Shown one piece after another: positions 3,370 to 17,960 of a DNA stretch of 64,000 nucleotides. Origin of the DNA: Amphiscolops sp. MND2022. Its lineage: Eukaryota. The translations under genes and the position numbers were made by a program. The notes beneath the pieces are model-generated. The model was not told the origin of the DNA. It ran no database searches and worked only from the letters and a program-made list of their open reading frames with translations. Each line of letters opens with the position of its first letter. Position 1 is the first letter of the stretch. The DNA lies in NCBI GenBank assembly GCA_964187785.1, contig OZ076412.1, forward strand, positions 12,152,001-12,216,000, written 5' to 3'.

Positions 3370-6183
3370 GTGTGTGTCTGTGGAATTAGTTAGCGCCCAA
3401 AAGTGTTCTTTTGGCAAGCGCTACCGACAAGGCGGGTTCTTCAGACAGGAGTTCTAGGCGGGGTTCTGTTGTGCCGAAAAAATCTTGGCGGCACGCTGCT
3501 GTAGATTGGCAATTCATCCAGTGCTCCAAAATTGTGTTCTTCATGGCACTTGGGGCGGTTGGGATCTACGTTTTCGTTCATGAGGTGGGAATAGGTTTTC
3601 AAATGGTGGTAGTGTCCTGCTCTTAGTTGTGCTAGCAAGGTAGCGTCTTTTCGATGACTTATTTGTTCTTCATCTCTTTTTTCCGAGTACCCAGCTTAGG
3701 TCCCTTTAGTTCGGTGGTGGGACGGCGCGGGATCCCTGAAGGACGGTTGATACATGCTAGGGCGGCTTTCAGGTTGATACTTTCGGGTTGTTCTGTTGTG
3801 AGTTTAGAACCATTTTTTGCTTCTTCGTCTGCAATTTCATTTTCCTTCAGTTCAGAATTTCCTGGTACCCACTGGACCCAGATCGATTTTCGGCTCCAGT
3901 TTTTCGGTGTATCGGGTTTGTGATTTCAGTGCTGTACAGAGGCATTGGCTGTCTGTGCAGATGAATGTTTCTTTATCGTGGGGATGGTGTTTTTCAAGGA
4001 TTTCTAGGAACGACTGGAGGGCTGCCTTTTCTTCGTCGTAGGATGAAGTGAATCCTGCCTCGTTTTCTGATTATTTTGATAACTTCTGGGGTGGAGGCGC
4101 TACCCCTGGAGAAAATGGCTGCGTACCCTCCGTCTGTTATACCGGCAGTGGCTGGTCCGTCTGTGTAGATAGTCAATTAGCAATTGAAAGAGTCAAGGTA
4201 CTATATAACTTCGTTTGAAGTTACGCTCTTGTTTCTCCGTTAACTGTGGCGTTGACGTGCTAATTGTTGGAGCTCAGCCATGGCGCGAGGTTAGCTTGCA
4301 TTGATTGGTCTTGGATTCAGTATGGCAATTGGGGGGTTTTGTTGAGTTCCTCTGATTGCCTTCGCCAACTGCTTCTTTTAAGTCTGTTGGGTGCTGGCTT
4401 GTACAAAATTTTAATGCGAGGATGATCGGGTGAGTTTCTTGATGTTTTTTGATATGATGAAGCTCTGAGTGTGGTAGCTACTTATGCCGCTTTCTATCTG
4501 CAGTGCATCGATTGCAGTGGAGCTGCGTAATCGAGGACGCTTCTCTGGGTGGCGATGTATATTTTCCGGAGTCTTTTTTTGCCAGCCCCAGTCACGGGTT
4601 GCTACAGCTGTATTAAGTTCGTGCGTTTGGACAAATTTTGAGAGACTTCCTCGGCGTGGGGTGCGGAAGTGAGACCACTATCCATTTCAACACCTAGGAA
4701 CTTTGGAGTAGGGTTGAAGGGCATGGCCTCATCATTCAGTCTCAGTATTTGTTTCCATCTGGCTTCAATGGTCCAGAAGGCAAAGAAGGTGACTTCGCAT
4801 TTTGTTTGGTTTAGGTTGAGCTTGATTTTTCTGCTCCATTCAGCCACGTGATCGTTGGCTTTCTGGACTCTTTCTACGGCTTTTCTTCATTGTTGTCACA
4901 TGACCAAACTGGTCTCCTACGAAAAGGGCGTGTTCTATGGGTAGGTTTTTTGTTACTTCGTCAATGAAAAGGTGGAACAATATGGGCGCTAGCACAGATC
5001 CTTGGGGAACGCCTTGTTTTATTTTCCGACTCCTGCTCATTGCTGAGCCATATAACATATTACTTGGCGGTTATTCAGGAAAGCGGTATTTCATCTGATG
5101 CATTTCGCTGGGATTCTTTTCTGATAGTATGATCAACAGTCTTTCTTACCATACTCTATCAAAGGCTTTCGATAATCGAAGAGAGCCATGGCTGTTCTCT
5201 TTAGCGTTTTCTCTTGAAAACTGTCGTCAATGGCTTGGACCAGACGTTATCAGGTCTTCACAGCATGGGTTTTTCCTACCTCCGCACTGGGCATTGCTCA
5301 AGAGTCTATTTATTTCAACGATGTGGATGAGTCTGGTGGCGGTCATTCTATCATTGTTTGACTAAGCATGAAGTTAGGCTGACATGTCTGTATGAGGATA
5401 TTTCAGATGAGGATTTGCCCGTTTTAGCAGGGGAATGATTGTGGATTCTTTTATTCTTGGGGGCATACTCCTTGATGCCAGGAAAGGTTGAACAGCGCTA
5501 ACATTTCTCTTGCTTTCGGTCCGAAGGCTTTAATGAACGCGGGTGTTATTTAATCGGGACCAGCTGCTCCATTTTTTCTCATGCTTCTGATTGCTTTGTT
5601 GAGTTAGCCGACTGTGAAGCTTTGTGTGCTGCTGTTATCAACAGATGGCGCGTTCACAATCTTTTTTGAAAGTCTGTTTTTGTTACGCTCTTAGCATGGC
5701 CTCGTTTGGTTGGGAAGGTGGTGTTGTGTTTCCGAGGAAATGAAAGACACGCCAAAGCTTGCTGGGGTCAGTGCTGAACTGTTTCTTCAATGAAAGATCT
5801 CTAGCTGCGTTGTCTTTCCGTCTCAATTTCTTGATGTACTTTTTGGCATAATTCTATCCATTCTTTGCAGTGCGTGCGTACCATCCTTCTAAGCTTGTTT
5901 CGTTGTTTGATTAGACTTTTCATAGCCGGAGTTAAGTGGCTCTTTGTTTTCTTGGCCCTGGTTGTTCGGGGACCGTTTGTTTCGCTGCGCTGATGACCGC
6001 TTCTTGAAAATTCGTAATTCTCTTGATGGTGCTGTTTTCTGTACTTTCTACCTTCTCCTCTGATAGCTCACTAAAGGCAGATAGGTTAGCGTTTTTCTTC
6101 CATCGCGGTGATCTCTGAAGAAGCTTCATTGTTTTGCATTTACAGAGGAGTGTGGTTGTTGACGGCAAGTGGTCTGAGCCTCC
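3370..6183 (-). mobile_element. Degraded I/Ingi-group non-LTR retrotransposon (end of APE endonuclease, RT, RNase H, C-terminal Cys/His region)
   Basis: GGSDHLP (APE end), GVPQGSVLAPILF, PKFLGVEMDSGL, IYTDG (RNase H) and QLRAGHYHHL...PKCHEE motifs across frameshifted ORFs; 3' end AACTAATTCCACAGACACACAC. Confidence 0.88.
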
Positions 6184-6440
6184 TGTTGAAGCTACAAAAA
6201 TACGTTTCCAATTTTAAACAATGATGATTTCGAGCATGTTAATCATATTTCATATACACGTCAGCTTTCAAATTGAATCATGATTAGTTCTCTTGTTTAT
6301 GCTATTACTGACTTTTTTGTTGTTGATTAAATCAATTCAGCTGCTTCTGAATAGAAAACATTTCAGTTCTAAAAAAGATGGTTTTGATAATAATCTCTTA
6401 CTCTCCCACAATAAAATCAAGCTATCAAAGATAAGCAACA
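6184..6440 (+). repeat. 5' LTR of BEL/Pao element (257 bp)
   Basis: TGTTGAAGCT...AAGCAACA, contains AATAAA, followed by TTTGGTACCTGTCGACCCGGG (PBS-like). Confidence 0.95.
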
Positions 6441-6648
6441 TTTGGTACCTGTCGACCCGGGAAAAATCAGTTATTACTCACTTTTTTGTTGTTGATTAAA
6501 TCATTTCAGCTGCTTCTGAATAGAAAACATTTCAGTTCTAAAAAAGATTGTTTTGATAATAATCTCTTACTCTCCCACAATAAAATCAAGCTATCAACGA
6601 TAAGCAACATTTGGTACCTATCGACCCGGGAAAAATCAGCGGAGCAGC

Positions 6649-8144
6649 ATGTCGTCAACCTACGAGAGGAAGACGCTTGAACAGTTGAAACGTTCCCGCT
6701 CAGCAATTCTTGGTGTGACCACCAAATTAGAAACCAAGCTTAGACCCTATTTGGATAAAGCTAAAGAAGATATTACGGCTGATGACCTCAGCTATCTTCG
6801 TACAAGTGAAAGACAATTGGAAACAAGATTCGAAGATGCAGGCGCTCTAAATTCTGCAGCATTAGAACGTACTCCAGATACAGATTCAGATCTGGAAAAG
6901 GAAATTGAAGACGCTGAAGATTTCGAGAACAAAATCGGAACATAACTTGAACGAATTAGCAGTTTTTTGGAACAATTTGAAGTTTCTGATTCTGCTGTGA
7001 CAGCTGCAATCAATGCATCACCTACATCCAGCTCTTCTACAACAGGAAATTTGAAAATGCCCAAATTTGATCTTCCGAAATTCAAAGGTCACTACAAAGA
7101 CTGGACTCCATTTTACGAACAGTTCATGGCTTCAGTGGATAGCAGCACAACAATTGTAGATATTCAGAAGTTCAACTATCTCAAAGCAGCTCTCAGTTGT
7201 GAAGCTCTACAATTAGTTTCGCACTTGCCATTATCCAACTCCAATTACATAATTGCTTTGAAATCCTCGATGGACCGTTACGATAACGAGCGACTGACAG
7301 TCAATTCCCATTTAGACGCAATACTTCAGTTGCAGCCTTTGAGTGGTGAGTCAGCTTCACAACTTCGACAACTTCTCGTAAGTTTTGAAGAAAATTTAAT
7401 GGCAATTGAAGCGCTTGAAGTAAACACGAAAAATAGTGACTTCATTTGGGTACGAATTTTATCCGAGAAGCTAGATCAGGAATCTAGACGCCAGTGGGAA
7501 CTAGATTATCCTGGGAAAAAGTTGCAAACACTTCAGCAATTGGAAGATTTCATAAACAAACGTGTTCAAGCTTTAAAGGCTTCGAGTTCAGTTACAACCA
7601 CTCGTAAAGTTAATAAATCTACCAATTACAACAAATTCGGAAGAAATCAAAAGATTGAATCGAAGATTTCCCAAAACTACAAGACTACATCTGAAAGATG
7701 TCATTGCTGTTCAGAAAACCACAAAATCTTTGCTTGTAAGAAGTTCGCTTCACTCAACATTAAAGACAGAAAAATCTAATTTATTCGTCCAAACTATGTT
7801 TCAATTGTTTATGCCGTGGGCACTTAACGAAAGACTGCAAATCGAAGATTTCCCAAAACTACAAGACTACATCTGAAAGATGTCATTGCTGTTCAGAAAA
7901 CCACAAAATCTTTGCTTGTAAGAAGTTCGCTTCACTCAACATTAAAGACAGAAAAAATCTAATTTATTCGTCCAAACTATGTTTCAAATGTTTATGCCGT
8001 GGGCACTTAACGAAAGACTGCAAATCGAAACATACTTGCAAAAAGTGTCAAGGTAAACATAACTCAATACTTCACACAGATTCATCTCAAATTGGGGAAG
8101 TTTCAGGATCAGTTATAGTGAACCAAGCACTTACCTTTTCGGTT
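6649..8144 (+). pseudogene. First (duplicated) BEL/Pao gag copy, disrupted
   Basis: Same protein as 8937-10040, with a premature TAA near 6943, a frameshift near 7780, an internal 182-bp duplication, and truncation at the duplication junction. Confidence 0.9.
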
Positions 8145-8640
8145 TCTTAGCATGGCCTCGTTTGGTTGGGAAGGTTGTGTTGTGTTTCCGAGGAAATGAA
8201 AGACACGCCAAAGCTTGCTGGGGTCAGTGCTGAACTGTTTCTTCAATGAAAGATCTCTAGCTGCGTTGTCTTTCCGTCTCAATTTCTTGACGTACTTTTT
8301 GGCATAATTCTATCCATTCTTTGCAGTGCGTGCGTACCATCCTTCTAAGCTTGTTTTGTTGTTTGATTAGACTTTTCATAGCCGGAGTTAAGTGGCTCTT
8401 TGTTTTCTTGGCCCTGGTTGTTCGGGGGACCGTTTGTTTCGCTGCGCTGATGACCGCTTCTTGAAAATTCGTAATTCTCTTGATGGTGCTGTTTTCTGTA
8501 CTTTCTACCTTCTCCTCTGATAGCTCGCTAAAGGCAGATAGGTTAGCGTTTTTCTTCCATCGCGGTAATCTCTGAAGAAGCTTCATTGTTTTGCATTTAC
8601 AGAGGAGTGTGGTTGTTAACTGCAAGTGGTCTGAGCCTCC
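8145..8640 (-). repeat. Duplicated fragment of the I/Ingi-group LINE (copy of 5689-6183)
   Basis: Near-identical sequence; ORF 8257-8625 parallels ORF 5932-6168. Confidence 0.92.
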
Positions 8641-8897
8641 TGTTGAAGCTACAAAAATACGTTTCCAATATTAAACAATGATGATTTCGAGCATGTTAAT
8701 CATATTTCATATACACGTCAGCTTTCAAATTGAATCATGATTAGTTCACATGTTTATGCTATTACTCACTTTTTTGTTGTTGATTAAATCAATTCAGCTG
8801 CTTCTGAATAGAAAACATTTCAGTTCTAAAAAAGATTGTTTTGATAATAATCTCTTACTCTCCCACAATAAAATCAAGCTATCAACGATAAGCAACA
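8641..8897 (+). repeat. Second (duplicated) 5' LTR
   Basis: Near-identical to 6184-6440, preceded by the same LINE flank (...GAGCCTCC) and followed by PBS and gag. Confidence 0.95.
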
Positions 8898-8936
8898 TTT
8901 GGTACCTATCGACCCGGGAAAAATCAGCGGAGCAGC

Positions 8937-10223
8937 ATGTCGTCAACCTACGAGAGGAAGACGCTTGAACAGTTGAAACGTTCCCGCTCAGCAATTCTTG
9001 GTGTGACCACCAAATTAGAAACCAAGCTTAGACCCTATTTGGATAAATCTAAAGAAGATATTACGGCTGATGACCTCAGCTATCTTCGTACAAGTGAAAG
9101 ACAATTGGAAACAAGATTCGAAGATGCAGGCGCTCTAAATTCTGCAGCATTAGAACGTACTCCAGATACAGATTCAGATCTGGAAAAGGAAATTGAAGAC
9201 GCTGAAGATTTCGAGAACAAAATCGGAACACAACTTGAACGAATTAGCAGCTTTTTGGAACAATTTGAAGTTTCTGATTCTGCTGTGACAGCTGCAATCA
9301 ATGCATCACTTACATCCAGCTCTTCTACAACAGGAAATTTGAAAATGCCCAAATTTGATCTTCCGAAATTCAAAGGTCACTACAAAGACTGGACTCCATT
9401 TTACGAACAGTTCATGGCTTCAGTGGATAGCAGCACAACAATTGCAGATATTCAGAAGTTCAACTATCTCAAAGCAGCTCTCAGTTGTGAAGCTCTACAA
9501 TTAGTTTCGCACTTGCCATTATCCAACTCCAATTACATAATTGCTTTGAAATCCTCGATGGACCGTTACGATAACGAGCGACTGACAGTCAATTCCCATT
9601 TAGACGCAATACTTCAGTTGCAGCCTTTGAGTGGTGAGTCAGCTTCACAACTTCGACAACTTCTCGTAAGTTTTGAAGAAAATTTAATAGCAATTGAAGC
9701 GCTTGAAGTAAACACGAAAAATAGTGACTTCATTTGGGTACGAATTTTATCCGAGAAGCTAGATCAGGAATCTAGACGCCAGTGGGAACTAGATTATCTT
9801 GGGAAAAAGTTGCAAACACTTCAGCAATTGGAAGATTTCATAAACAAACGTGTTCAAGCTTTAGAGGCTTCGAGTTCAGTTACAACCACTCGTAAAGTTA
9901 ATAACTCTACCAATTACAACAAATTCCGAAGAAATCAAAAGATTGAATCGAAGATTTCTCAAAACTACAAGACTACATCTGAAAGATGTCATTGCTGTTC
10001 AGAAAACCACAAAATCTTTGCTTGTAAGAAGTTCGCTTGACTCAACATTAAAAACAGAAAAAATCTAGTTTATTCGTCCAAACTATGTTTCAATTGTTTA
10101 TGCCGTGGGCACTTAACGAAAGACTGCAAATCGAAACATACTTGCAAAAAGTGTCAAGGTAAACATAACTCAAAACTTCACACAGATTCATCTCAAATTG
10201 GGGAAGTTTCAGGATCAGTTATA
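8937..10223 (+). pseudogene. BEL/Pao gag (DUF1759-like region plus three Cys/His knuckles) with in-frame TGA at 10038-10040
   Basis: LPKFKGHYKDWTPFYEQF...QKFNYLKAAL motif; CHCCSENHKIFAC, CFNCLCRGHLTKDC and CKKCQGKHNSKLH knuckles. The frame runs on into pol after the stop; the other copy has TCA at this codon. Confidence 0.92.
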
Positions 10224-11966
10224 GTGAACCAAGCACTTACCTTTTCGGCTTCTGGCATCATACCAACAGCTTTGGTACCAATTGAGGATGATTCCTCCAA
10301 TATAACGAATTGCCGAGCTTTGATTGACAGTGGCTCCCAGCTCAGTTTAATTTCTGAATCAGCAGTGCAACGAATGCATTTAAAACGACAGAAACGATCA
10401 CATACAGTTAACGGTATTGGGATTGTTTCTAAAACCTATAACTCGGGAAGTGTGAGTTTGTGTCTCAAACCAAAGAATGGAATGAATGTCATAAAAGTCC
10501 ACGCATTAATTCTTCCTAGCCTTACACAACTCCTACCAAATTGCTCATTTGACGTTGAATCACAGTTTCATATGCGAACTGTTGAATTAACGGATCCTTC
10601 TTTTAATGACTCCAGTGCAATAGAATTAATCTTGGGATCAGATGTAGCAGAAGAAATCATTTTGGACGGAAAATTCACGGAAACCAATGGATTGCATTTC
10701 CGTAACACAGTTTTCAGTTGGATTGTTTCAGGAAAGCAACCAAATCAAAGTTGCACAATTGCAAATACTTCACTCTGTATCAATGACATATTTGATCCGA
10801 AAAAGTTTTGGGAAATGGAAGGAGTACCAATCGCCAATAAGAATAGTGCTGAGGAAATTGCTTGTGAAAAACATTACCAAGAAACTACCATTGTGCAAAA
10901 CAACAGATTTGTTGTCGAAATGCCGTTCAAATCTGATGCTACACCTTTAGGTGATACTTTCGTCCAGGCTAAAAGAAGATTTTTTTATTTGGAGAAGCGT
11001 CTTGAAGCTAATCCTGCTTTGAAGAAAAGTTATTCAGATTTCATTCATGAGTTCCAAGACTTGAATCATCTTGAAGCAGTACCTAACGAGGAACTCGTCA
11101 AAAAAGACTCTAAAATGAACTTCTTACCTCATCATTGCGTACACAAAGAAGATTCCACCACGACTAAACATCGAGTTGTATTCGATGGATCAGCGAAATC
11201 GAGTACTGGTGTTTCACTGAATGGATCTCTAATGGTAGGACCAACAGTCCAAGAAGATTTGTTTTCCATTTTCATCAGATTTCGTTTCCATAAAGTTGGG
11301 CTCTCAGCAGACATTGCTAAAATGTTTCGACAAATTGCTCTGGAATCAGTTGCAAAAGATTTTCACCGCATCCTTTGGCGAGATTCAATCACAGATTCAA
11401 TACAGCAGTTTCGAATGACTAGAGTGACGTATGGAATAGCATCATCAGCTTTTCACTCCACGCGGTCAGTAGAAGAAGTTGGTAATCGCTGTATTGATGA
11501 CTTGCTTGCAAAAACTATCAAACACGATTTCTACGTTGATGACTACCTTTCTGGTGCCAATTCTGTCGAAGAAGCGCAAATCAAAGTTACAAAAATTTAT
11601 GAAAAACTCAAAGAGTATGGATTTGAACTTCGCAAATCGTCTAGTCATCGTCAAATCACCTCTTCATTGCCTGAAAATTTGCGAGAAAATCCAGACAAAG
11701 AGAAATTCATGGACGAAAACTACAAAATCAAGACCTTGGGTGTGTCTTGGAAACCTAATTCTGATTCTTTTTATTTCTACTCGAGTGTTTGTTCGAATGA
11801 CAAAATCACAAAGCGTAAATTACTCTCAGAAACAGCCAAGCTCTTGGATCCAGTTGGTTGGCTAGCACCAGTAGTAATCAAATTCAAAGTAATTATGCGG
11901 AACTTTGGATTCAAGGAGTGGGATGGGATGATGTACTTCCAACAGAGCTTCAAAACGAGTGGATAG
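10224..11966 (+). pseudogene. BEL/Pao pol part 1: aspartic protease and reverse transcriptase
   Basis: RALIDSGSQLS protease motif; LPHHCVHK, RVVFDGSAK, SLNGSLMVGP, ADIAKMFRQI, VTYGIASSAF and FYVDDYL Pao-type RT motifs; frameshift near the 3' end. Confidence 0.95.
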
Positions 11967-11980
11967 AAATCTAGTCCGAT

Positions 11981-14083
11981 TTGAACAATTTGATCAGCTT
12001 ACAGTTACAACGGTGCATTGTTCCAACTGAGAAAAGTGACAAGGTTCAACTACATTTGTTTACAGACGCTTGCGAAGTAGCCTTTGCCGCAGTTATTTAC
12101 ATGCGAATAACAGACTCTTCGGGAAAAATTTTCACTAACTTGGTTTCCAGCAAAACACGATTTGCTCCCAATAAAACAATTTCCGTACCACGTCTCGTGT
12201 TGTGTGGAGCACATCTTGGAAGCGAACTTCTAACAAAAAATAAGGACGTATTGGAACTGTCTACTTTCCCTCAGCCTGAAATATATGGCTGGACGGACTC
12301 TACGATTGTGTTACAGCGGTTAGCACAACTTCCACGAACATGGACAAGTTTTGTTGACAATCGTATATCCGAAATTCAACAAATTTTTCCTCGGGCAAAC
12401 TGGAATCATGTCAAGTCAAATTCCAATCCGGCTGATTGTGCATCACGCGGGACTCTTGTCAAAGATCTCATAGACACAAGTTTGTGGTGGCACGGTCCTG
12501 ATTGGCTCTCTCAACCCGAAAGCACCTGGCCACAGCCTTCTTCAACGGTGAATGAAGAAAACAAGCAACAGATCGAGTCGGAGAAAAAACACAAAAGATT
12601 CGAGACTGTTGCAAGTGCAGTAATTGCACCTCAGCCCTGGATAGACATCAGCCGTTACAGTAGCCTCTGGAAACTTCAACGCATCATAGCGACGATCATC
12701 AAGGCTTCTCATCTCTTCAAAGATGTCTCCAAAGAAGTTTCAGTTACACCTCAACTTTTAAACCAAGCAAAACTCATCCTTTTGAGACAACATCAAGCAC
12801 AGTATTACGCCACAGACTTGGCAGTATTAACGACAGGCAAAGAATTTCCTCGCAACAGCAAAATTCTAAATCTCTCTCCTTTTCTCGACGAAGACACTGG
12901 AACCATACGGGTTGGCGGTCGTTTAGCACAAAGTCAGATACATCACGATCAGAAGTTTCCCTATCTTGTCCATTCTGACTCACATCTGGCCATTCTCATT
13001 CTTCGCTATTTTCATGAAGCTACCCTTCATGGCGGGGGGCAGCTGACGCTCAACAGCAGAGGCAAGAACTTGGGCAACAGAGTCATCAAAAACTGGGTGA
13101 AGTGCAGTAGATTCAATGGTGATGTACCTGTGCAGATAATGGCAGACTTGCCCAGTGAATGTTTGGATGCTGGTACTCCTTTCATAAATACTGGTGTTGA
13201 TTTTGCCGGACCTATTGTGACGAAACCTAACTGCAAAAACTACATAGCAATTTTTGTTTGTTTTGCAACGAAGGCAGTTCACATAGAAGTGGTGACGGAT
13301 TTGTCCAAAGATTCCTGTATACTGGCTTCAAAACGATTCATATCCAGACGTGGATTGCCGGAGCAACTATTCAGCGACAATGGATCGAACTTCATTGGAG
13401 CTAGAAATGATTTGATGAAAGTCAGAGCCATTCTCAGCAAGGATTCGGGCGGCAATTCTGTCACAGACTTCGCCATTCAAAAAGGCATTCAATGGGTGAC
13501 AATACCACCTCGAGCACCTCATTTTGGAGGCCTCTGGGAAGCGGCTGTGGAGTCCATGAAGCGACATCTGAGACGCAGTGTTGGTACCCAGATTCTGTCA
13601 TTCGAAGAACTCAATACATACCTCATCCAAATAGAGGCGATTCTGAATTCTCGGCCAATCACTTCGATGTCAAATGACCCAAACTATTTGAGACCACTCA
13701 CACCTGCTCATTTTCTTCTGGGAAGATCAATGAATGACATACCGGAGTCGAACCACAGTGTTGACGATGACAATCTTCACATGCAAACGAGACATCGATT
13801 GCTTGAGAAGATGAAGTTTTCTTTCTGGAAATCGTGGCATCGCGACTATCTGGTCACCCTGCAAATACGCAAAAAATGGCTTTCCAATGGACCAACATTT
13901 GCAGTTGGAGACCTGGTTTGGATTGCAGAGGATAATCAACGACCTTTACAATGGAAACTAGGCAGAATCACCGAGTTGTACTCAGGAAATGACAGTCTCA
14001 ATCGTGTTGCCAAAGTAATCACGGATACAGGAATGTTAGTACGACCTGTTGTAAAGCTTAGTAAGCTTCCCGTTGATCCTTAA
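11981..14083 (+). pseudogene. BEL/Pao pol part 2: RNase H, integrase and C-terminal DUF5641-like region
   Basis: LHLFTDACEVAFAAV, WTDSTIVL, SNPADCASRG, GVDFAGP, FSDNGSNF, PHFGGLWEAAV, FWKSWHRDYL and WKLGRITELY motifs. Confidence 0.95.
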
Positions 14084-15195
14084 TTGCCAGCAAATCACTC
14101 GCAGCTCAATTAGAAAGAAAAACATTTTGCAAAAAAAAATATTTTTTTTGGAACTCGAAAACTCTGACGCTTTTGGGATGACAAAACTAATCCCAAAAAT
14201 TGATGACCCATGGCATTGACCTATAAAATGCACCAATCGCTTCGAGGATGTTGCCTCCATAACGCCTTGGAAGCAGAATGTCCAATATCGCCCCTAAAGT
14301 GCGAAAAAATCGTCTTACCCTGATAGTGTCTGTTCTTACAATTGTTAACTTCAAGATTTTCGTTACTTTCTTAGTCACAATCCACTGATTACTTCTGGAT
14401 CTCTCAACCCTTGTTTGCATACATTCCAGGGCTAGCTTAGAGCAATTATGAATCCATTAAAGCTACATATTGAGAATTTCTCCCTTATTTTAATGATTTA
14501 CACTCATTTTCCACAACTTTGTTATTGAATGCCGACTGTCATTCCAGTGCCAAAACTTAGTGACGCTAGCGAAATTTGCCTATGGATATTCAAGAGGGCC
14601 AATACAGCTCTGTTATCAACGCCTTGGAGTTACAATTTCAATTTACTGCGAAAACAATCATTTTTCTTTATTTTTATTGAAAATTTTCACATCTAGTTGG
14701 TTCGATTGATGTGATGTTTTTCTAGTGCCAAAATACGCTCGACACTACACCAGCCGTATAAAAGGGTTTATTCGACTCCTAATAGTCTTGCCTACAACTT
14801 CTTGGAGCGGGATTTTCGCTTTTTGTCATTTATTTTCTTTTATTGACAAATAAACATACTCGAATTCACCACAGATTTAGCTGATAAATTATATAACAGA
14901 GAAGATACAGAAACAAAACTAACCAACAGAGAACCAGTTACAAACCTCACTCATTGGCATTTTCTGTTATTCTGTTCATATGGGGCAACAACTCGGGCTC
15001 AGAGATTTCCTCAAGAAATTTGATGATAAGATTTAATGATTTTCGTCATTTTTCAAGTATTTCTCACTTTTACACAAAGTGTTTGTCGCATGAATCGGCA
15101 AACAACCCCTGGATACGTGATTTACGATATTCTTATCAACAATTTGTATGCATTATATTATCTCTGGAATGTTACAGAAATTTTTGTGTCTTGCA

Positions 15196-17257
15196 TCAGT
15201 TGGCGAAACTTTCACTGAGTACGGAGAGCTCAAAAACCCTTGGGAAGACAGACAAAGGATACTCCAGGAGTTCCACTTCACTCAATGGAGTCAAATTCGG
15301 AGCATTCATCGCATCCTTAGCAGCCTTCCCAAAGTTAGCTAATCGTCTGTTCTTTTTACGACATTTGTATTGATTTCGTGGATTGCTATGACGAAGAAAC
15401 TTATTCAAATCGTAGTCAACAGCTTGAAAGGCCTCACAATGTTCCAAAACATCGCGCCGAAAGAAGAAAGGCCACACAGTTGGCTCTTCACTATTGAACA
15501 AACCAGTGGGTTCTCAAGCCTAAGGAACTGAGCAGCCTTCCATTGTTGCAAAGCAACTCTCCATTCCCTATCCTCGAGAAGTTTCACCAGCTGATCCAAC
15601 CCATAGCGATCAAGCCACTGCCTGATGAAACCTTTACCAGCGCCACTGCTGAATTGTCCAAAAACACGATTAGCTCTTTCTTGATCGTTAACATTAATAC
15701 CCTCCCAGCCATGCACAAGAGCCCATCGGACGGTCCCATCTGTATTCAAAGATCGCCCAGTGAGTACACAATGAGCATAGCAAGGAGGTTGAATGATGAC
15801 GTCTCCGGGCTCAGCGAAGTGATACCGCAAATCCCGTATCAACTTTCGTTCTCTCCTGCTGTATAACGTTTTTGGCTCAAATCATAGTCTGTACAAGTGA
15901 TTGAAAGATTGTACGCTCATAAGGAACTGAGAAGAGGCAATAGTGGACGCAAAAATCCAAATCTTGCGACCGGATTCCAATTTCGCTATACTTTCACTTC
16001 CTCCCCATTCAGTATATGCACAAGTAAACCAAGGGCCTTTGGTAGCTAAAAGAGCCTTGGAACGAATTTTAATGTATTTCGGATCGAGACAACTTATAAA
16101 CTTGTCGGGCAGTTCAAAGGAAAACGTCAAACAACCCTTGAAGCCAGGATTATCAGTGCCTACACTCCAACGATGAACAGTGGCTTTTGCTGCTGCCTTG
16201 AGAGAGAGAGAGAAAGACGATTAATTACTATACCTTATAAAAAAGAAACAACTTATTTGGTACAGTATGCGTAGTAATTAAAATGAAATTAAAATAAAGT
16301 AGCACTTTTGAACTATTGGAGAAGTTGGAAGCCGCGCCAAATATGGTTTTTATAAAAAGTTGGACAATCTTTGTAAAGTTGTATCATGTGTTCTTTGATA
16401 AGTTTCTTCCATTTTTCTCTCTTGTATTTGATTGTTCTCAGTTCAGTGGGTAAGGAAGTCCAACTTCTCACACAGGTATAAAAGTAAGATCCATGAAGAA
16501 ACTTACTGGAACCAGGCTCTTTCAATATAATTTTTTTGTTTCTTTCATTAATTCGAAAACTCATTCAAGATGATTCTGAAAAGCTGACCTTTCGTTTTTG
16601 AGAATCGAATATAATAAGTCAAATGATTTCAAGTCAATTCTTTCATACTTAAAATTTCTTCAGATATTCTCAAAGAGGTTGAGCATTTGTTTCTAGATCT
16701 GTAGAACACGGTTCTAAGAGCCCAATTCAGTTGTTTCTCTAAAGAAAGTAAAAGAGCACTACTGATGTCCGTTAAAAGAAGGTTACAATATTCAAAATGA
16801 CTTAGGACAAGAGCATGAAGCAGCACTTTTAAACATTTTTTGGGTAGGTTGTTGCTTATTGTTTGAATTGCTTTTATGCCAAGGGCCATTTTTTTAAGCA
16901 CACTTTTAACTTGATATTCGAAAGTTAGTTTATTGTCGATGATAATGTCTAAATACTTTACTTGAACGAGGAAAACAATGCGCCTTCGTTCCACGCTAAC
17001 TTTGCCTTCCCAGTCGAATTACAGAGGTTGTTTGCCTCAGGACCCCGAACAACAAGTGGCTGCATTGGGAAATTACCCACCCAGTTGCTCACAGAAACAA
17101 CTAGAATAGGAAGAAGCCCCCTCCTCCTCCACGGCAGACCACCTTGCTGCTCAGCAATCCTGAAAATACTCTCAACTTTTTTTTCATTTTCGATCATGCT
17201 ACTATGAGGTAACTCCTCGCCTCCGCCTCCTTCAACCCCTGAACATTCTATATTCAT
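15196..17257 (-). pseudogene. Antisense intronless cargo ORF with a JmjC (KDM2/KDM7-like 2OG-Fe(II) dioxygenase) domain, about 430 aa reconstructed; disrupted by a LINE insertion (16201-16960), TGA at 15882-15884 and a probable frameshift near 15500
   Basis: Segments 17257-16961, 16196-15885 and 15881-15405 join in one frame. Motifs KGPWFTCA(Y)TEWGGSESIAKLESGRKIWIF and YHFAEPGDVIIQPPCYAHCVLT match JmjC beta-strand motifs (HxD/E...K...H). Confidence 0.8.
16201..16960 (-). mobile_element. 5'-truncated CR1/L2-group LINE fragment (C-terminal RT region, 3' UTR, (CT)n tail) inserted in the BEL cargo ORF
   Basis: VKYLDIIIDNKLTF...LVLSHFEYCN...LEKQLNWALR and FYTCVRSWTSLP motifs typical of CR1/L2 RT C-termini; CTTGA at both junctions (16197-16201, 16961-16965). 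Confidence 0.82.
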
Positions 17258-17306
17258 TTCTGAAAATATTAAAGCATCTGACGCAGGTCCTTCAAGGCGG
17301 GCGGAA

Positions 17307-17562
17307 TGTTGAAGCTACAAAAATACGTTTCCAATTTTGAACAATGATGATTTCGAGCATGTTAATCATATTTCATATACACGTCAGCTTTCAAATTGAA
17401 TCATGATTTGTTCACATGTTTATGCTATTACTCACTTTTTTGTTGTTGATTAAATCAATTCAGCTGCTTCTGAATAGAAAACATTTCAGTTCTAAAAAAG
17501 ATTGTTTTGATAATAATCTCTTGCTCTCCCACAATAAAATCAAGCTATCAACATAAGCAACA
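17307..17562 (+). repeat. 3' LTR of BEL/Pao element (256 bp)
   Basis: Near-identical to the 5' LTRs; preceded by AAGGCGGGCGGAA (PPT-like, 17294-17306) and followed by TSD CCTCC. Confidence 0.95.
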
Positions 17563-17960
17563 CCTCCAATGTCTTCGTTTGTGGTCCACTGTATTCACTG
17601 TTTGTCCACTGGAAGACGTCTGGGTGCTCTCGTTGCCAGTGGCTCCGTTGATTCTGGTTGCTGAGCCATTGTTGGCGCAGTATAGGTTGCTGTCCGATAG
17701 CCACTCTTCTATCCGTTCTCCTCTATCTGGTGGTTGCAACATCTGATGCTGCGTATCAAGCTTACGTATTCAGACCTACCATCAAACGGAGTAGTCACCT
17801 GTTTCATTTGTTGCAGAAGTTGGACCATATGTCTTATTCTCCCAAGTGTTTGCGGGGGAAAATAAGGAACAAGCTTCAAATAACCATTGTATCTACATCG
17901 TCTACGGTGGAATTGGGGGGGGGGCTTTGTAAGAAACAAGGTGTATCTGGGTGGAAGTAA
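17563..17960 (-). mobile_element. Upstream endonuclease portion of the same I/Ingi-group LINE, on the far side of the BEL insertion
   Basis: QPPDRGERIEEWLSDSNLYCANNGSATRIN is APE-like and leads into GGSDHLP once the BEL element and one TSD are removed. The 5' boundary is approximate. Confidence 0.8.

What the first reader, a model, noticed from the sequence alone, without database searches (positions are those of the whole stretch)
15196..17257. BEL/Pao LTR retrotransposon carrying an antisense JmjC (KDM2/KDM7-like histone demethylase fold) cargo gene
Seen: between the pol stop (14083) and the 3' LTR (17307), inside the TSD-bounded element, three minus-strand ORF pieces join in one frame after removing the LINE insertion and reading through one TGA. 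The reconstruction is MNIECSG...ALFSSFK|AAAKATVHRWSVGTDNPGFKGCLTFSFELPDK...KGPWFTCAYTEWGGSESIAKLESGRKIWIFAST...RL*FEPK...YHFAEPGDVIIQPPCYAHCVLTG..., about 430 aa with the probable frameshifted tail, and has no introns. Established knowledge (KDM2A sequence recalled from memory): FTCAYTEWGGSESIAKLESGRKIW aligns without gaps to [24 protein letters not shown], keeping the 17-residue spacing from the first Fe ligand to the 2OG-binding Lys. EPGDVIIQPPCYAHCVLT matches KQGYTFVIPSGWIHAVYT, including the distal His. KDM2/KDM7 enzymes remove H3K36me2, H3K9me2 or H3K27me2. Inference: the family captured a JmjC gene through an RNA intermediate and may use it against chromatin silencing, analogous to transposon-borne TET/JBP, AlkB-like or VANC anti-silencing factors. 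I know of no described JmjC-bearing BEL/Pao element but could not search the literature.
Basis: partly seen in the sequence, partly recalled or inferred. Interest (0 to 1): 0.93.

Follow-up and report, generated by a model that had tools for sequence, protein, structure and literature searches.

The report
Retrotransposon-borne antisense JmjC oxygenase gene
A BEL/Pao jumping gene in this animal genome carries, backwards between its polymerase gene and its right-hand repeat, a conserved gene for an iron-dependent JmjC enzyme (the class that includes histone demethylases); the copy in this window is broken, but hundreds of relatives, many of them intact, sit in two different superfamilies of jumping gene.

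Summary
Observation confirmed. Window 15196-17257 (minus strand) holds a decayed copy of a 433-codon gene. It lies inside a BEL/Pao LTR retrotransposon with LTRs at 8641-8897 and 17307-17562 and a CCTCC target-site duplication.

Defects of this copy:
- a 764-bp repeat insertion
- a Tyr in place of the first iron-binding His
- one TGA stop
- a 4-nt deletion

Evidence from sister copies and diverged families in the same genome:
- They keep intact 432-433-aa ORFs.
- These carry T-x-x-H-x-E ... K(+17) ... H.
- dN/dS is 0.17-0.2.

An AlphaFold model (pLDDT 93) matches only JmjC oxygenases: Foldseek E 1e-9, and VIA Z 14.9 to KDM7A/PHF2/PHF8. JMJD5, TYW5 and FIH tie with these.

Pfam does not recognise the window family. 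No public source names any member.

The gene always lies antisense, downstream of pol. In BEL/Pao elements its ATG sits about 50 nt from the 3' LTR. Distant homologues hold the same slot in Ty3/gypsy-type elements. The gene tree shows the gene was exchanged between the two superfamilies.

A recent capture of a host KDM2/7 mRNA is not supported. An anti-silencing demethylase role is plausible but untested. I found no published report. The scan had already noted this gene on other DNA of this genome.

The parts
5689..8147 (+). Tandem duplicate of flank + 5' LTR + start of gag (equals 8145-10253); holds an extra LTR copy at 6184-6440
   Evidence: Self-BLAST, 98-99% identity. Real duplication or assembly artefact not resolved.
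8636..8640 (.). Target-site duplication CCTCC, left
   Evidence: Direct reading
8641..8897 (+). 5' LTR (TGTTGAAG...AAGCAACA)
   Evidence: 98% identical to 17307-17562
8937..10040 (+). gag ORF (DUF1759)
   Evidence: Pfam E 5e-32
10224..11966 (+). pol part 1: aspartic protease, RT, start of Peptidase_A17
   Evidence: Pfam RVT_1, RVP, Peptidase_A17
11981..14083 (+). pol part 2: Peptidase_A17 C-part, integrase (rve), DUF5641; stop at 14081-14083
   Evidence: Pfam; ORF list
14084..15195 (.). Spacer between the pol stop and the JmjC stop. It holds the presumed 3' UTR of the antisense gene, with a candidate ATTAAA on the minus strand at 15037-15032.
   Evidence: Conserved with L031 at 95.8%; the poly(A) signal is a reading only
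15196..15501 (-). JmjC gene, C-terminal tail in a shifted frame (4-nt deletion near 15494). It holds the conserved basic motif RKKNRRLAN and an acidic/hydrophobic end.
   Evidence: the motif is conserved across clades
15408..15881 (-). JmjC gene, piece with the distal iron ligand (PGDVIIQPPCYAHCVLTG) and the following helices
15882..15884 (-). In-frame TGA (Leu205 in the intact sister copy)
15885..16201 (-). JmjC gene, piece with the first metal motif. It reads T-C-A-Y-T-E here (Tyr at 16016-16014) but T-C-A-H-I-E in intact copies. The 2OG-binding Lys lies in SGRKIW.
16202..16965 (.). 764-bp insertion of a dispersed repeat (probably the 3' end of a non-LTR element), absent from sister copies
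   Evidence: no Pfam hit
16966..17257 (-). JmjC gene, N-terminal piece; ATG at 17257-17255
17286..17306 (+). Polypurine-tract-like stretch (..AAGGCGGGCGGAA) next to the 3' LTR. On the minus strand it is the 5' leader of the JmjC gene.
   Evidence: Direct reading; conserved in three diverged families and in L066
17307..17562 (+). 3' LTR. Its minus strand carries a candidate antisense promoter: TGACGT + TATATGAAA at 17386-17371, 122 nt upstream of the ATG.
   Evidence: A similar TGACGTATACAAAT occurs in the diverged family L032. Conserved blocks are in A4. Promoter function is inferred, not shown.
17563..17567 (.). Target-site duplication CCTCC, right

Best explanation
The stretch is a dead copy of an accessory gene that belongs to the retrotransposon itself.

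Shown:
- BEL/Pao elements of this genome have the layout 5'LTR-gag-PR-RT-RH-IN, then about 1.1 kb of spacer, then a 433-codon gene on the opposite strand. Its ATG lies about 50 nt inside the 3' LTR, just past the polypurine tract.
- The gene encodes a divergent single-domain JmjC (double-stranded beta-helix) Fe(II)/2-oxoglutarate oxygenase. A helical, basic C-terminal tail follows the domain.
- The metal and 2OG ligands (T-x-x-H-x-E, K at +17, distal H) are conserved across a deep family.
- The gene is under purifying selection.
- It is a movable module. Homologues occupy the same antisense post-pol slot in Ty3/gypsy-type elements, and the gene has been swapped between the two superfamilies.

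Inferred:
- The gene is transcribed as its own unit from an antisense TATA-type promoter in the 3' LTR. Its mRNA ends in the spacer.
- The protein is an active oxygenase (my estimate about 0.75).
- It works in trans in the nucleus.
- Its most likely job (about 0.35-0.4) is to remove repressive lysine methylation, such as H3K9 or H3K27, and so delay heterochromatic silencing of the element.
For: Element and position:
- Element identity, LTRs and target-site duplication.
- Intact 432-433-aa ORFs in sister copies and in a family only 51-53% identical.
- Full elements with the same layout: L032 (LTR pair 99.7% identical), L031 (98.8%) and L036 (98.8%).

Fold and motifs:
- AlphaFold model with pLDDT 93.1 and pTM 0.88.
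- Foldseek against PDB: 427 hits at E<=1e-3. Every one of the 50 listed is a JmjC protein; best E 1.4e-9.
- AFDB Swiss-Prot search gives the same picture.
- VIA-align Z 14.9-14.4 to ceKDM7A, KDM7A, PHF2 and PHF8.
- ESM Atlas by shape and by features returns only JmjC clusters.
- The family profile puts PHF8/KDM7 first in PDB, with T/H/acid/K/H aligned.
- 9 of 71 relatives touch Pfam JmjC, best E 1.4e-5.
- H-x-E, K and H are invariant or nearly so over 32-71 sequences down to 16-20% identity.

Selection and abundance:
- dN/dS is 0.17 at dS 0.20 between subfamilies and about 0.2 between families.
- The genome holds 944 candidate matches. 119 were scored, all at E<1e-37, and 85 of them have no stop inside the match.

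Other carriers and exchange:
- Ty3/gypsy-type carriers: L037, L071 (LTR pair 100% identical) and L069.
- The two clades are homologous along the whole protein: hhalign probability 99.9%, E 6e-32.
- Exchange between superfamilies: a 100/100 split, with an AU test rejecting a single BEL-borne clade at p 2e-8.
- L066 has the same PPT/LTR junction as the window family.

Promoter lead:
- Conserved antisense LTR blocks and a TATA-like motif.
Against: - No RNA run is on record, so transcription, start site and strand are unproven.
- No enzymatic data exist.
- Pfam and single-sequence PDB searches miss the window family. The best profile E-value to a solved JmjC is only 0.15.
- The structural neighbours tie between lysine demethylases and JmjC hydroxylases, so the substrate is open.
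- No reader or DNA-binding domain is recognised that could aim the enzyme at the element.
- The window copy itself is non-functional.
Confidence: 0.8

Rival explanations
1. The enzyme is a JmjC hydroxylase or other oxygenase rather than a histone lysine demethylase. It would modify a host or element protein (as FIH, JMJD5, JMJD6 and JMJD7 do) or an RNA base (as TYW5 does on tRNA), for example to tune translation, capsid or integrase function, or primer tRNA.
For: - Foldseek ranks TYW5 and FIH first.
- VIA Z for JMJD5 (14.4), TYW5 (14.1) and FIH (14.1) ties with the KDM7 group.
- The architecture is JmjC-only plus C-terminal helices, with no PHD, Tudor or JmjN domain. From my knowledge of the family, this is typical of JmjC hydroxylases.
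Against: - The only sequence-level neighbours are PHF8/KDM7.
- The top VIA rows and an Atlas shape row are KDM7/PHF-type.
- From memory, the Glu ligand (H-x-E) is typical of the KDM4/5/6 demethylases.
Confidence: 0.3
2. One reading: this BEL/Pao family recently captured a processed mRNA of a host KDM2/KDM7 gene.
For: - The ORF is intronless in this family.
- The best profile hits are PHF8/KDM7.
Against: - Identity to any solved JmjC is 10-15%.
- The gene is present in many BEL/Pao families that differ by about 50% in protein. It is also present in Ty3/gypsy-type elements at 25-30% identity, always in the same slot.
- Relatives occur in other samples, including ocean metagenomes.
- No source names any member as a host gene.
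- An old element-borne lineage fits better than a recent capture.
Confidence: 0.04
3. The protein acts without catalysis, as a scaffold that displaces silencing factors (as reported for fission-yeast Epe1).
For: Papers listed describe Epe1 as a JmjC-family anti-silencing factor with non-enzymatic functions, for example PMC7192584. I read the titles and abstracts only.
Against: The iron and 2OG ligands are invariant or nearly so across the whole family, down to 16-20% identity. This argues for selection on catalysis.
Confidence: 0.05
4. This is a host gene family that merely lies near, or is often hit by, retrotransposon insertions, or a chance ORF.
For: One relative (P0015, L070) is not next to a recognisable pol.
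Against: - The ORF lies inside LTR pairs with a target-site duplication.
- It keeps a fixed distance of 42-52 nt from the LTR in four families.
- It is copied together with the element hundreds of times.
- dN/dS is well below 1.
Confidence: 0.02

Closest known systems
KDM7/PHF8/PHF2 and KDM2A JmjC lysine demethylases
   Same: - JmjC fold: VIA Z 14.0-14.9 over 220-250 residues.
- Aligned T-x-x-H, acidic ligand, Lys at +17 and distal His.
   Different: - Only 11-15% identity.
- Glu instead of Asp as the acidic ligand.
- No PHD, CXXC, F-box or JHD modules.
- Encoded by a retrotransposon.
- Substrate unknown.
JmjC-only hydroxylases (TYW5, FIH, JMJD5, JMJD6, JMJD7)
   Same: - Best Foldseek E-values, 1e-9 to 1e-7.
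- Compact architecture: JmjC domain plus C-terminal helices.
   Different: - No sequence-level match.
- Those are host housekeeping enzymes.
- Dimerisation and substrate were not tested here.
Antisense accessory ORFs between pol and the 3' LTR in plant Ty3/gypsy elements (Retand, Grande, RIRE2; PMC11963269)
   Same: - Same slot and same orientation.
- Present in most copies of the lineage.
- Proposed regulatory role.
   Different: - Those encode TRP28 or other non-enzymatic domains of unknown function, in plants.
- Here the host is an animal, the carriers are BEL/Pao and Ty3/gypsy-type elements, and the product is a JmjC oxygenase.
Orchid Ty3/gypsy elements carrying an AlkB m6A RNA demethylase (PMC9289625)
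   Same: An LTR retrotransposon that carries an Fe(II)/2OG dioxygenase able to erase a methyl mark.
   Different: - AlkB class, not JmjC.
- A recent acquisition in one plant lineage.
- RNA substrate shown in vitro.
Enzymatic ORF3s shared between diverse retroelements in bdelloid rotifers (PMC5408684)
   Same: Accessory enzymatic ORFs acquired repeatedly and shared between unrelated retroelement types.
   Different: Those are GDSL esterase, DEDDy nuclease and dUTPase. No JmjC is reported there.
Retroviral antisense genes driven from the 3' LTR (HTLV HBZ/APH-2, as summarised in PMC11963269)
   Same: A gene on the minus strand, next to the 3' LTR, with its own transcription unit.
   Different: Those are small regulatory proteins, not enzymes. 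The promoter is inferred here, not shown.
Transposon-borne anti-silencing factors (VANC of VANDAL elements, PMC5735166; TET/JBP genes in fungal KDZ transposons, from memory)
   Same: The concept of a mobile element carrying a factor that reverses epigenetic silencing.
   Different: - Those are DNA transposons of plants and fungi.
- The protein families are different.
- Function here is untested.

Membership tests
JmjC / cupin Fe(II)-2OG oxygenase superfamily | Double-stranded beta-helix JmjC fold | tested here: met
   Model pLDDT 93.1. All listed Foldseek, VIA and Atlas neighbours are JmjC proteins.
JmjC / cupin Fe(II)-2OG oxygenase superfamily | H-x-D/E ... H metal triad | tested here: met
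   H-I-E and A-H-C-V are present in intact copies and nearly invariant across 71 relatives. In the window copy the first His is Tyr, so that copy fails.
JmjC / cupin Fe(II)-2OG oxygenase superfamily | 2OG-binding Thr (-3 from His) and Lys (+17) | tested here: met
   These residues align to the corresponding T and K of PHF8 in the profile search and are nearly invariant.
JmjC / cupin Fe(II)-2OG oxygenase superfamily | Match to Pfam PF02373 at its curated threshold | tested here: inconclusive
   No hit for the window pieces or for intact copies of this family. 9 of 71 relatives match at E<=1, best 1.4e-5.
JmjC / cupin Fe(II)-2OG oxygenase superfamily | 2OG-dependent oxidation activity | not testable with these tools
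   Needs a biochemical assay.
KDM2/KDM7 (JHDM1/PHF) histone demethylase subfamily | Closest structural and sequence neighbour is KDM2/7, clearly above other JmjC groups | tested here: inconclusive
   KDM2/7 members are the top rows, but within 1 Z unit of JMJD5, TYW5 and FIH. The profile E-value is only 0.15.
KDM2/KDM7 (JHDM1/PHF) histone demethylase subfamily | H-x-D acidic ligand, as seen in PHF8 | tested here: not met
   The family has H-x-E where PHF8 has H-I-D in the printed alignment.
KDM2/KDM7 (JHDM1/PHF) histone demethylase subfamily | Accessory modules (PHD, CXXC, F-box/LRR, JHD) | tested here: not met
   No Pfam domain in the 432-433-aa proteins.
KDM2/KDM7 (JHDM1/PHF) histone demethylase subfamily | Demethylation of H3K36me2, H3K9me2 or H3K27me2 | not testable with these tools
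   Needs peptide or nucleosome assays.
BEL/Pao LTR retrotransposons | LTR pair with a target-site duplication | tested here: met
   257-bp LTRs 98% identical; CCTCC duplication.
BEL/Pao LTR retrotransposons | gag DUF1759, Peptidase_A17, RT, integrase with DUF5641, in the order PR-RT-IN | tested here: met
   Pfam.
LTR retrotransposons with antisense accessory ORFs (plant Retand/Grande type) | Conserved antisense ORF between pol and the 3' LTR | tested here: met
LTR retrotransposons with antisense accessory ORFs (plant Retand/Grande type) | TRP28 (PF04195) domain in the antisense ORF | tested here: not met
   No such Pfam hit.

The most novel reading that the evidence does not exclude
Animal LTR retrotransposons of two superfamilies (BEL/Pao and Ty3/gypsy-type) share a portable antisense gene cassette for a JmjC demethylase. 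The enzyme would erase repressive histone methylation laid down by the host's transposon-silencing pathway. That would make it the first transposon-encoded chromatin eraser known in animals, traded between unrelated elements as a counter-defence module.
Probability: 0.35. Interest if true: 0.92.

Novelty: new variant of a known kind. Interest (0 to 1): 0.8.

Why it matters
Mobile elements that fight epigenetic silencing with their own proteins are known from a few plant and fungal DNA transposons. One plant retrotransposon lineage carries an RNA demethylase.

Here an enzyme of the histone-demethylase fold is a standing, selected part of animal LTR retrotransposons. It is present in hundreds of copies, and it has been exchanged between superfamilies. 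If it acts on chromatin, it gives a directly testable case of a retroelement editing the host's silencing marks.

Even if its substrate is something else, it defines an unannotated and widespread JmjC clade. No member carries a name in the protein collections searched here.

It also shows that the antisense slot next to the 3' LTR, known from plant elements and from HTLV-type retroviruses, is used in animal retrotransposons as well.

Tried and rejected
- Pfam on the window pieces and on intact copies gave no JmjC hit.
- phmmer of an intact copy against PDB sequences gave only a chance TPR hit.
- The first AlphaFold model, built from 10 sequences, was poor (pLDDT 54). Its weak Foldseek hits were nevertheless all JmjC. 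It was replaced by the 71-sequence model.
- The clade-B profile alone found no JmjC in PDB sequences.
- RNA evidence: two run searches found no run on record as RNA. One small run of unknown type covers the LTR and the 5' half of the gene far more than pol. I do not count this as expression evidence.
- Source names and organism could not be obtained: no source names any member, and run and organism names are coded.
- Six literature searches found no report of a JmjC gene in an LTR retrotransposon. The library lacks most subscription journals and Repbase Reports, so this is not proof of absence.
All searches and models used natural copies.
- Rejected readings: chance ORF, one-off retrocopy, and a host gene lying beside elements (see the rival explanations).
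Full report
**1. The observation**

It also holds the shifted tail at 15196-15501. Translating 15196-16310 in the third frame gives one continuous reading across a single TGA.

Self-comparison of the window places 257-bp LTRs at 8641-8897 and 17307-17562, 98% identical. Both are flanked by CCTCC. A tandem duplication (5689-8147 = 8145-10253) repeats the left flank, the LTR and the start of gag.

The plus-strand ORFs between the LTRs carry DUF1759, aspartic protease, RVT_1, Peptidase_A17, rve and DUF5641. This is the BEL/Pao set.

**2. The gene belongs to the family, not to one copy**

A DNA search of the window's own 1.07-Gb assembly with the ORF found 11 copies at 90-96% identity, one at 83%, and families at 66-72%. 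Several copies have an uninterrupted frame:
- L003 and L009: 433 aa from the first Met.
- L002: 449 aa.
- L004: 415 aa.
- L021-L025, a diverged family: 432 aa, 51-53% identical in protein.

In the intact copies the first metal motif reads T-C-A-H-I-E. The window copy has Tyr there.

Against L003, the window copy shows the following:
- a 764-bp insertion at 16202-16965
- H161Y
- Leu205 changed to TGA
- a 4-nt deletion near 15494
- two 3-nt indels
- 25 amino-acid changes

The inserted 764 bp is itself a dispersed repeat.

**3. Position in the element**

Ten-kb stretches around other copies show the same layout.
- L032 has 333-bp LTRs that are 99.7% identical, one 1762-codon gag-pol frame, and the JmjC frame on the other strand. 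Its ATG lies 52 nt from the inner edge of the 3' LTR.
- L031 has an LTR pair 98.8% identical, with the ATG 49 nt from the LTR.
- The window has 49 nt.
- A related element in another assembly (L036) has 42 nt.

The short leader contains the polypurine tract of the element. It is conserved in three families and in L066.

On the gene's strand, the LTR carries TGACGT followed by TATATGAAA, 122 nt upstream of the ATG. The diverged family has TGACGTATACAAAT. I read this as a candidate antisense promoter. It is an inference.

**4. What the protein is**

Sequence-only tools miss it. A word-indexed search found only 9 relatives, none of them named.

An exhaustive profile search found 156 clusters at E<=1e-3. 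Across 32-71 of them, at identities down to 16-20%, the following residues are invariant or nearly so:
- W-F-T-x-G-H-I-E
- G-x-K-L-W, placing the Lys 17 residues after the His
- Q-P-x-x-x-A-H-x-V-L-T

Nine of 71 members touch Pfam JmjC, best E 1.4e-5. The family profile puts PHF8 and KDM7 first among PDB sequences (E 0.15). The alignment runs from the T-x-x-H motif to the distal His.

With the 71-sequence alignment, AlphaFold gives pLDDT 93.1 and pTM 0.88. The fold searches then agree:
- Foldseek finds 427 PDB chains at E<=1e-3. All 50 listed are JmjC proteins: TYW5 at 1.4e-9, then FIH, ceKDM7A, JMJD5, JMJD6, JMJD7 and JARID1B.
- Swiss-Prot models give the same result.
- VIA-align gives Z 14.9 for ceKDM7A, 14.8 for KDM7A, 14.7 for PHF2, 14.4 for PHF8 and JMJD5, 14.1 for TYW5 and FIH, and 14.0 for KDM2A.
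- The ESM Atlas agrees both by shape and by language-model features.

So the JmjC fold is firm. The KDM2/7 preference is slight. The acidic ligand is Glu, where PHF8 has Asp. No further domain is recognised.

A basic motif (RKKNRRLAN) near the C-terminus is conserved even between the two deep clades. It may be a nuclear import signal, but I have not tested that.

**5. Selection**

- Between two subfamilies at dS 0.20, dN/dS is 0.17.
- Between families it is about 0.2, with saturated dS.
- Within the window's family it is 0.24-0.5, as expected when dead copies are mixed in.

**6. Abundance and other carriers**

The profile finds 944 candidate places in this genome. 119 were scored, all at E<1e-37, and 85 of them have no stop inside the match.

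Flanks of 30 of these places fall into three groups:
- Clade-A genes lie tail-to-tail with a BEL/Pao integrase.
- Clade-B genes lie head-to-head with a 749-870-aa ORF that has no Pfam hit.
- Two loci (L066, L068) have a BEL/Pao integrase next to a clade-B gene.

In full elements from a closely related assembly, the clade-B gene sits antisense between a Ty3/gypsy-type pol (RVT_1, RT_RNaseH, Integrase_H2C2, rve) and that extra ORF, inside LTR pairs that are 99.7% and 100% identical (L037, L071).

A contig from another sample has a Ty3/gypsy-type pol with a clade-A-side gene in the same antisense slot (L069). Short contigs from ocean and other metagenomes also carry members.

The two clades are homologous along the whole protein (hhalign probability 99.9%, E 6e-32).

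In the gene tree the central split has 100/100 support and does not follow the carrier's superfamily. Holding all BEL-borne genes together costs 66 log-likelihood units (AU p 2e-8). One caveat applies: the group was named after I had seen a first tree. I conclude that the gene has moved between superfamilies while keeping its slot.

**7. How it most likely works**

Shown: a selected, element-borne gene in antisense orientation, with a JmjC fold and complete catalytic residues.

Inferred: its own transcription unit starting in the 3' LTR, enzymatic activity, and nuclear action in trans.

The antisense placement lets the gene be expressed apart from gag-pol and travel with the genomic RNA.

The substrate is open:
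- I give about 0.35-0.4 to removal of repressive histone lysine methylation, which would be anti-silencing.
- I give about 0.3 to a hydroxylase-type role on a protein or an RNA.

No RNA data were available.

**8. Comparison with what is known**

The closest described arrangements are:
- the plant antisense ORFs between pol and the 3' LTR (PMC11963269)
- the orchid Ty3/gypsy AlkB gene (PMC9289625)
- the rotifer ORF3s shared between retroelement types (PMC5408684)

None of these involves JmjC. Six searches of the held literature found no report of a JmjC gene in an LTR retrotransposon.

**9. Earlier notes of this scan**

A look-up shows that the same gene was noted on other pieces of this genome. 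Follow-up agents there reached the same reading, including the presence in two kinds of element. I treated those notes as leads. Everything above rests on my own calls.

**10. Verdict**

- The recent-capture story is not supported.
- The anti-silencing function is untested.
- The window copy is a pseudogene, but the family it belongs to is of high interest.

Noticed in passing
window 5689-10253: A 2.46-kb tandem duplication repeats the left flank, the 5' LTR and the first 1.4 kb of gag (5689-8147 = 8145-10253, 98-99% identical). The upstream LTR copy also has an internal duplication of about 169 bp (6303-6470 / 6472-6639). This could be a real rearrangement or an assembly artefact.
   Followed up: partly
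window 16202-16965: The 764-bp insert in the JmjC pseudogene is a dispersed repeat. It has at least 293 candidate copies, and 40 scored copies are 92-97% identical and nearly all full length. It looks like a young, uniform family. Two minus-strand ORF pieces have no Pfam hit.
   Followed up: partly
L037:6989-9235 (-), L071:6556-9168 (-): The Ty3/gypsy-type carriers have a further 749-870-aa sense ORF between the JmjC gene and the 3' LTR, head-to-head with the JmjC gene. Pfam finds nothing. The position suggests an env-like gene. Relatives are common in the window's genome (L052, L059, L062, L063, L067).
   Followed up: partly
L070:2264-16861: One JmjC relative (P0015, 39% identical) is not next to any pol. 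It sits between two 5-kb direct repeats (99% identical) that hold PIF1-helicase pieces, with a period of about 9.5 kb. It may be a different kind of carrier or a tandem array.
   Followed up: no
G000 places listed, e.g. C9:17573334 / 17587429; C11:37101245 / 37113945 / 37126663; C7:50850380 / 50862039: A large group of 336-codon open frames matches only profile positions 10-229. Many occur in pairs or triplets 11-14 kb apart on the same strand, as if elements stood in tandem arrays. Their carriers could not be fetched.
   Followed up: no
L032:900-5900, run X1: A small public run of unrecorded type covers the LTR and the first half of the JmjC ORF (depth 15-97, contigs without mismatches) but hardly covers pol (0-2). 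The three large DNA runs cover all parts alike. If X1 is an RNA library, this would hint at antisense expression.
   Followed up: partly
C-terminus of the JmjC proteins, e.g. window 15199-15380 (-), L021:2250-2424: After the basic RKKNRRLAN motif comes a conserved Ser/Asp/Glu-rich run followed by a hydrophobic Pro-Leu/Val-x-Val patch. It may be a short docking motif. Function unknown.
   Followed up: no
L066 and L068 (G000:C1120:95657-99544; C11:7349389-7353276): Two loci on different contigs are 99.6% identical over all 3.9 kb. They combine a BEL/Pao integrase with a clade-B JmjC gene and the same polypurine/LTR junction as the window family.
   Followed up: partly
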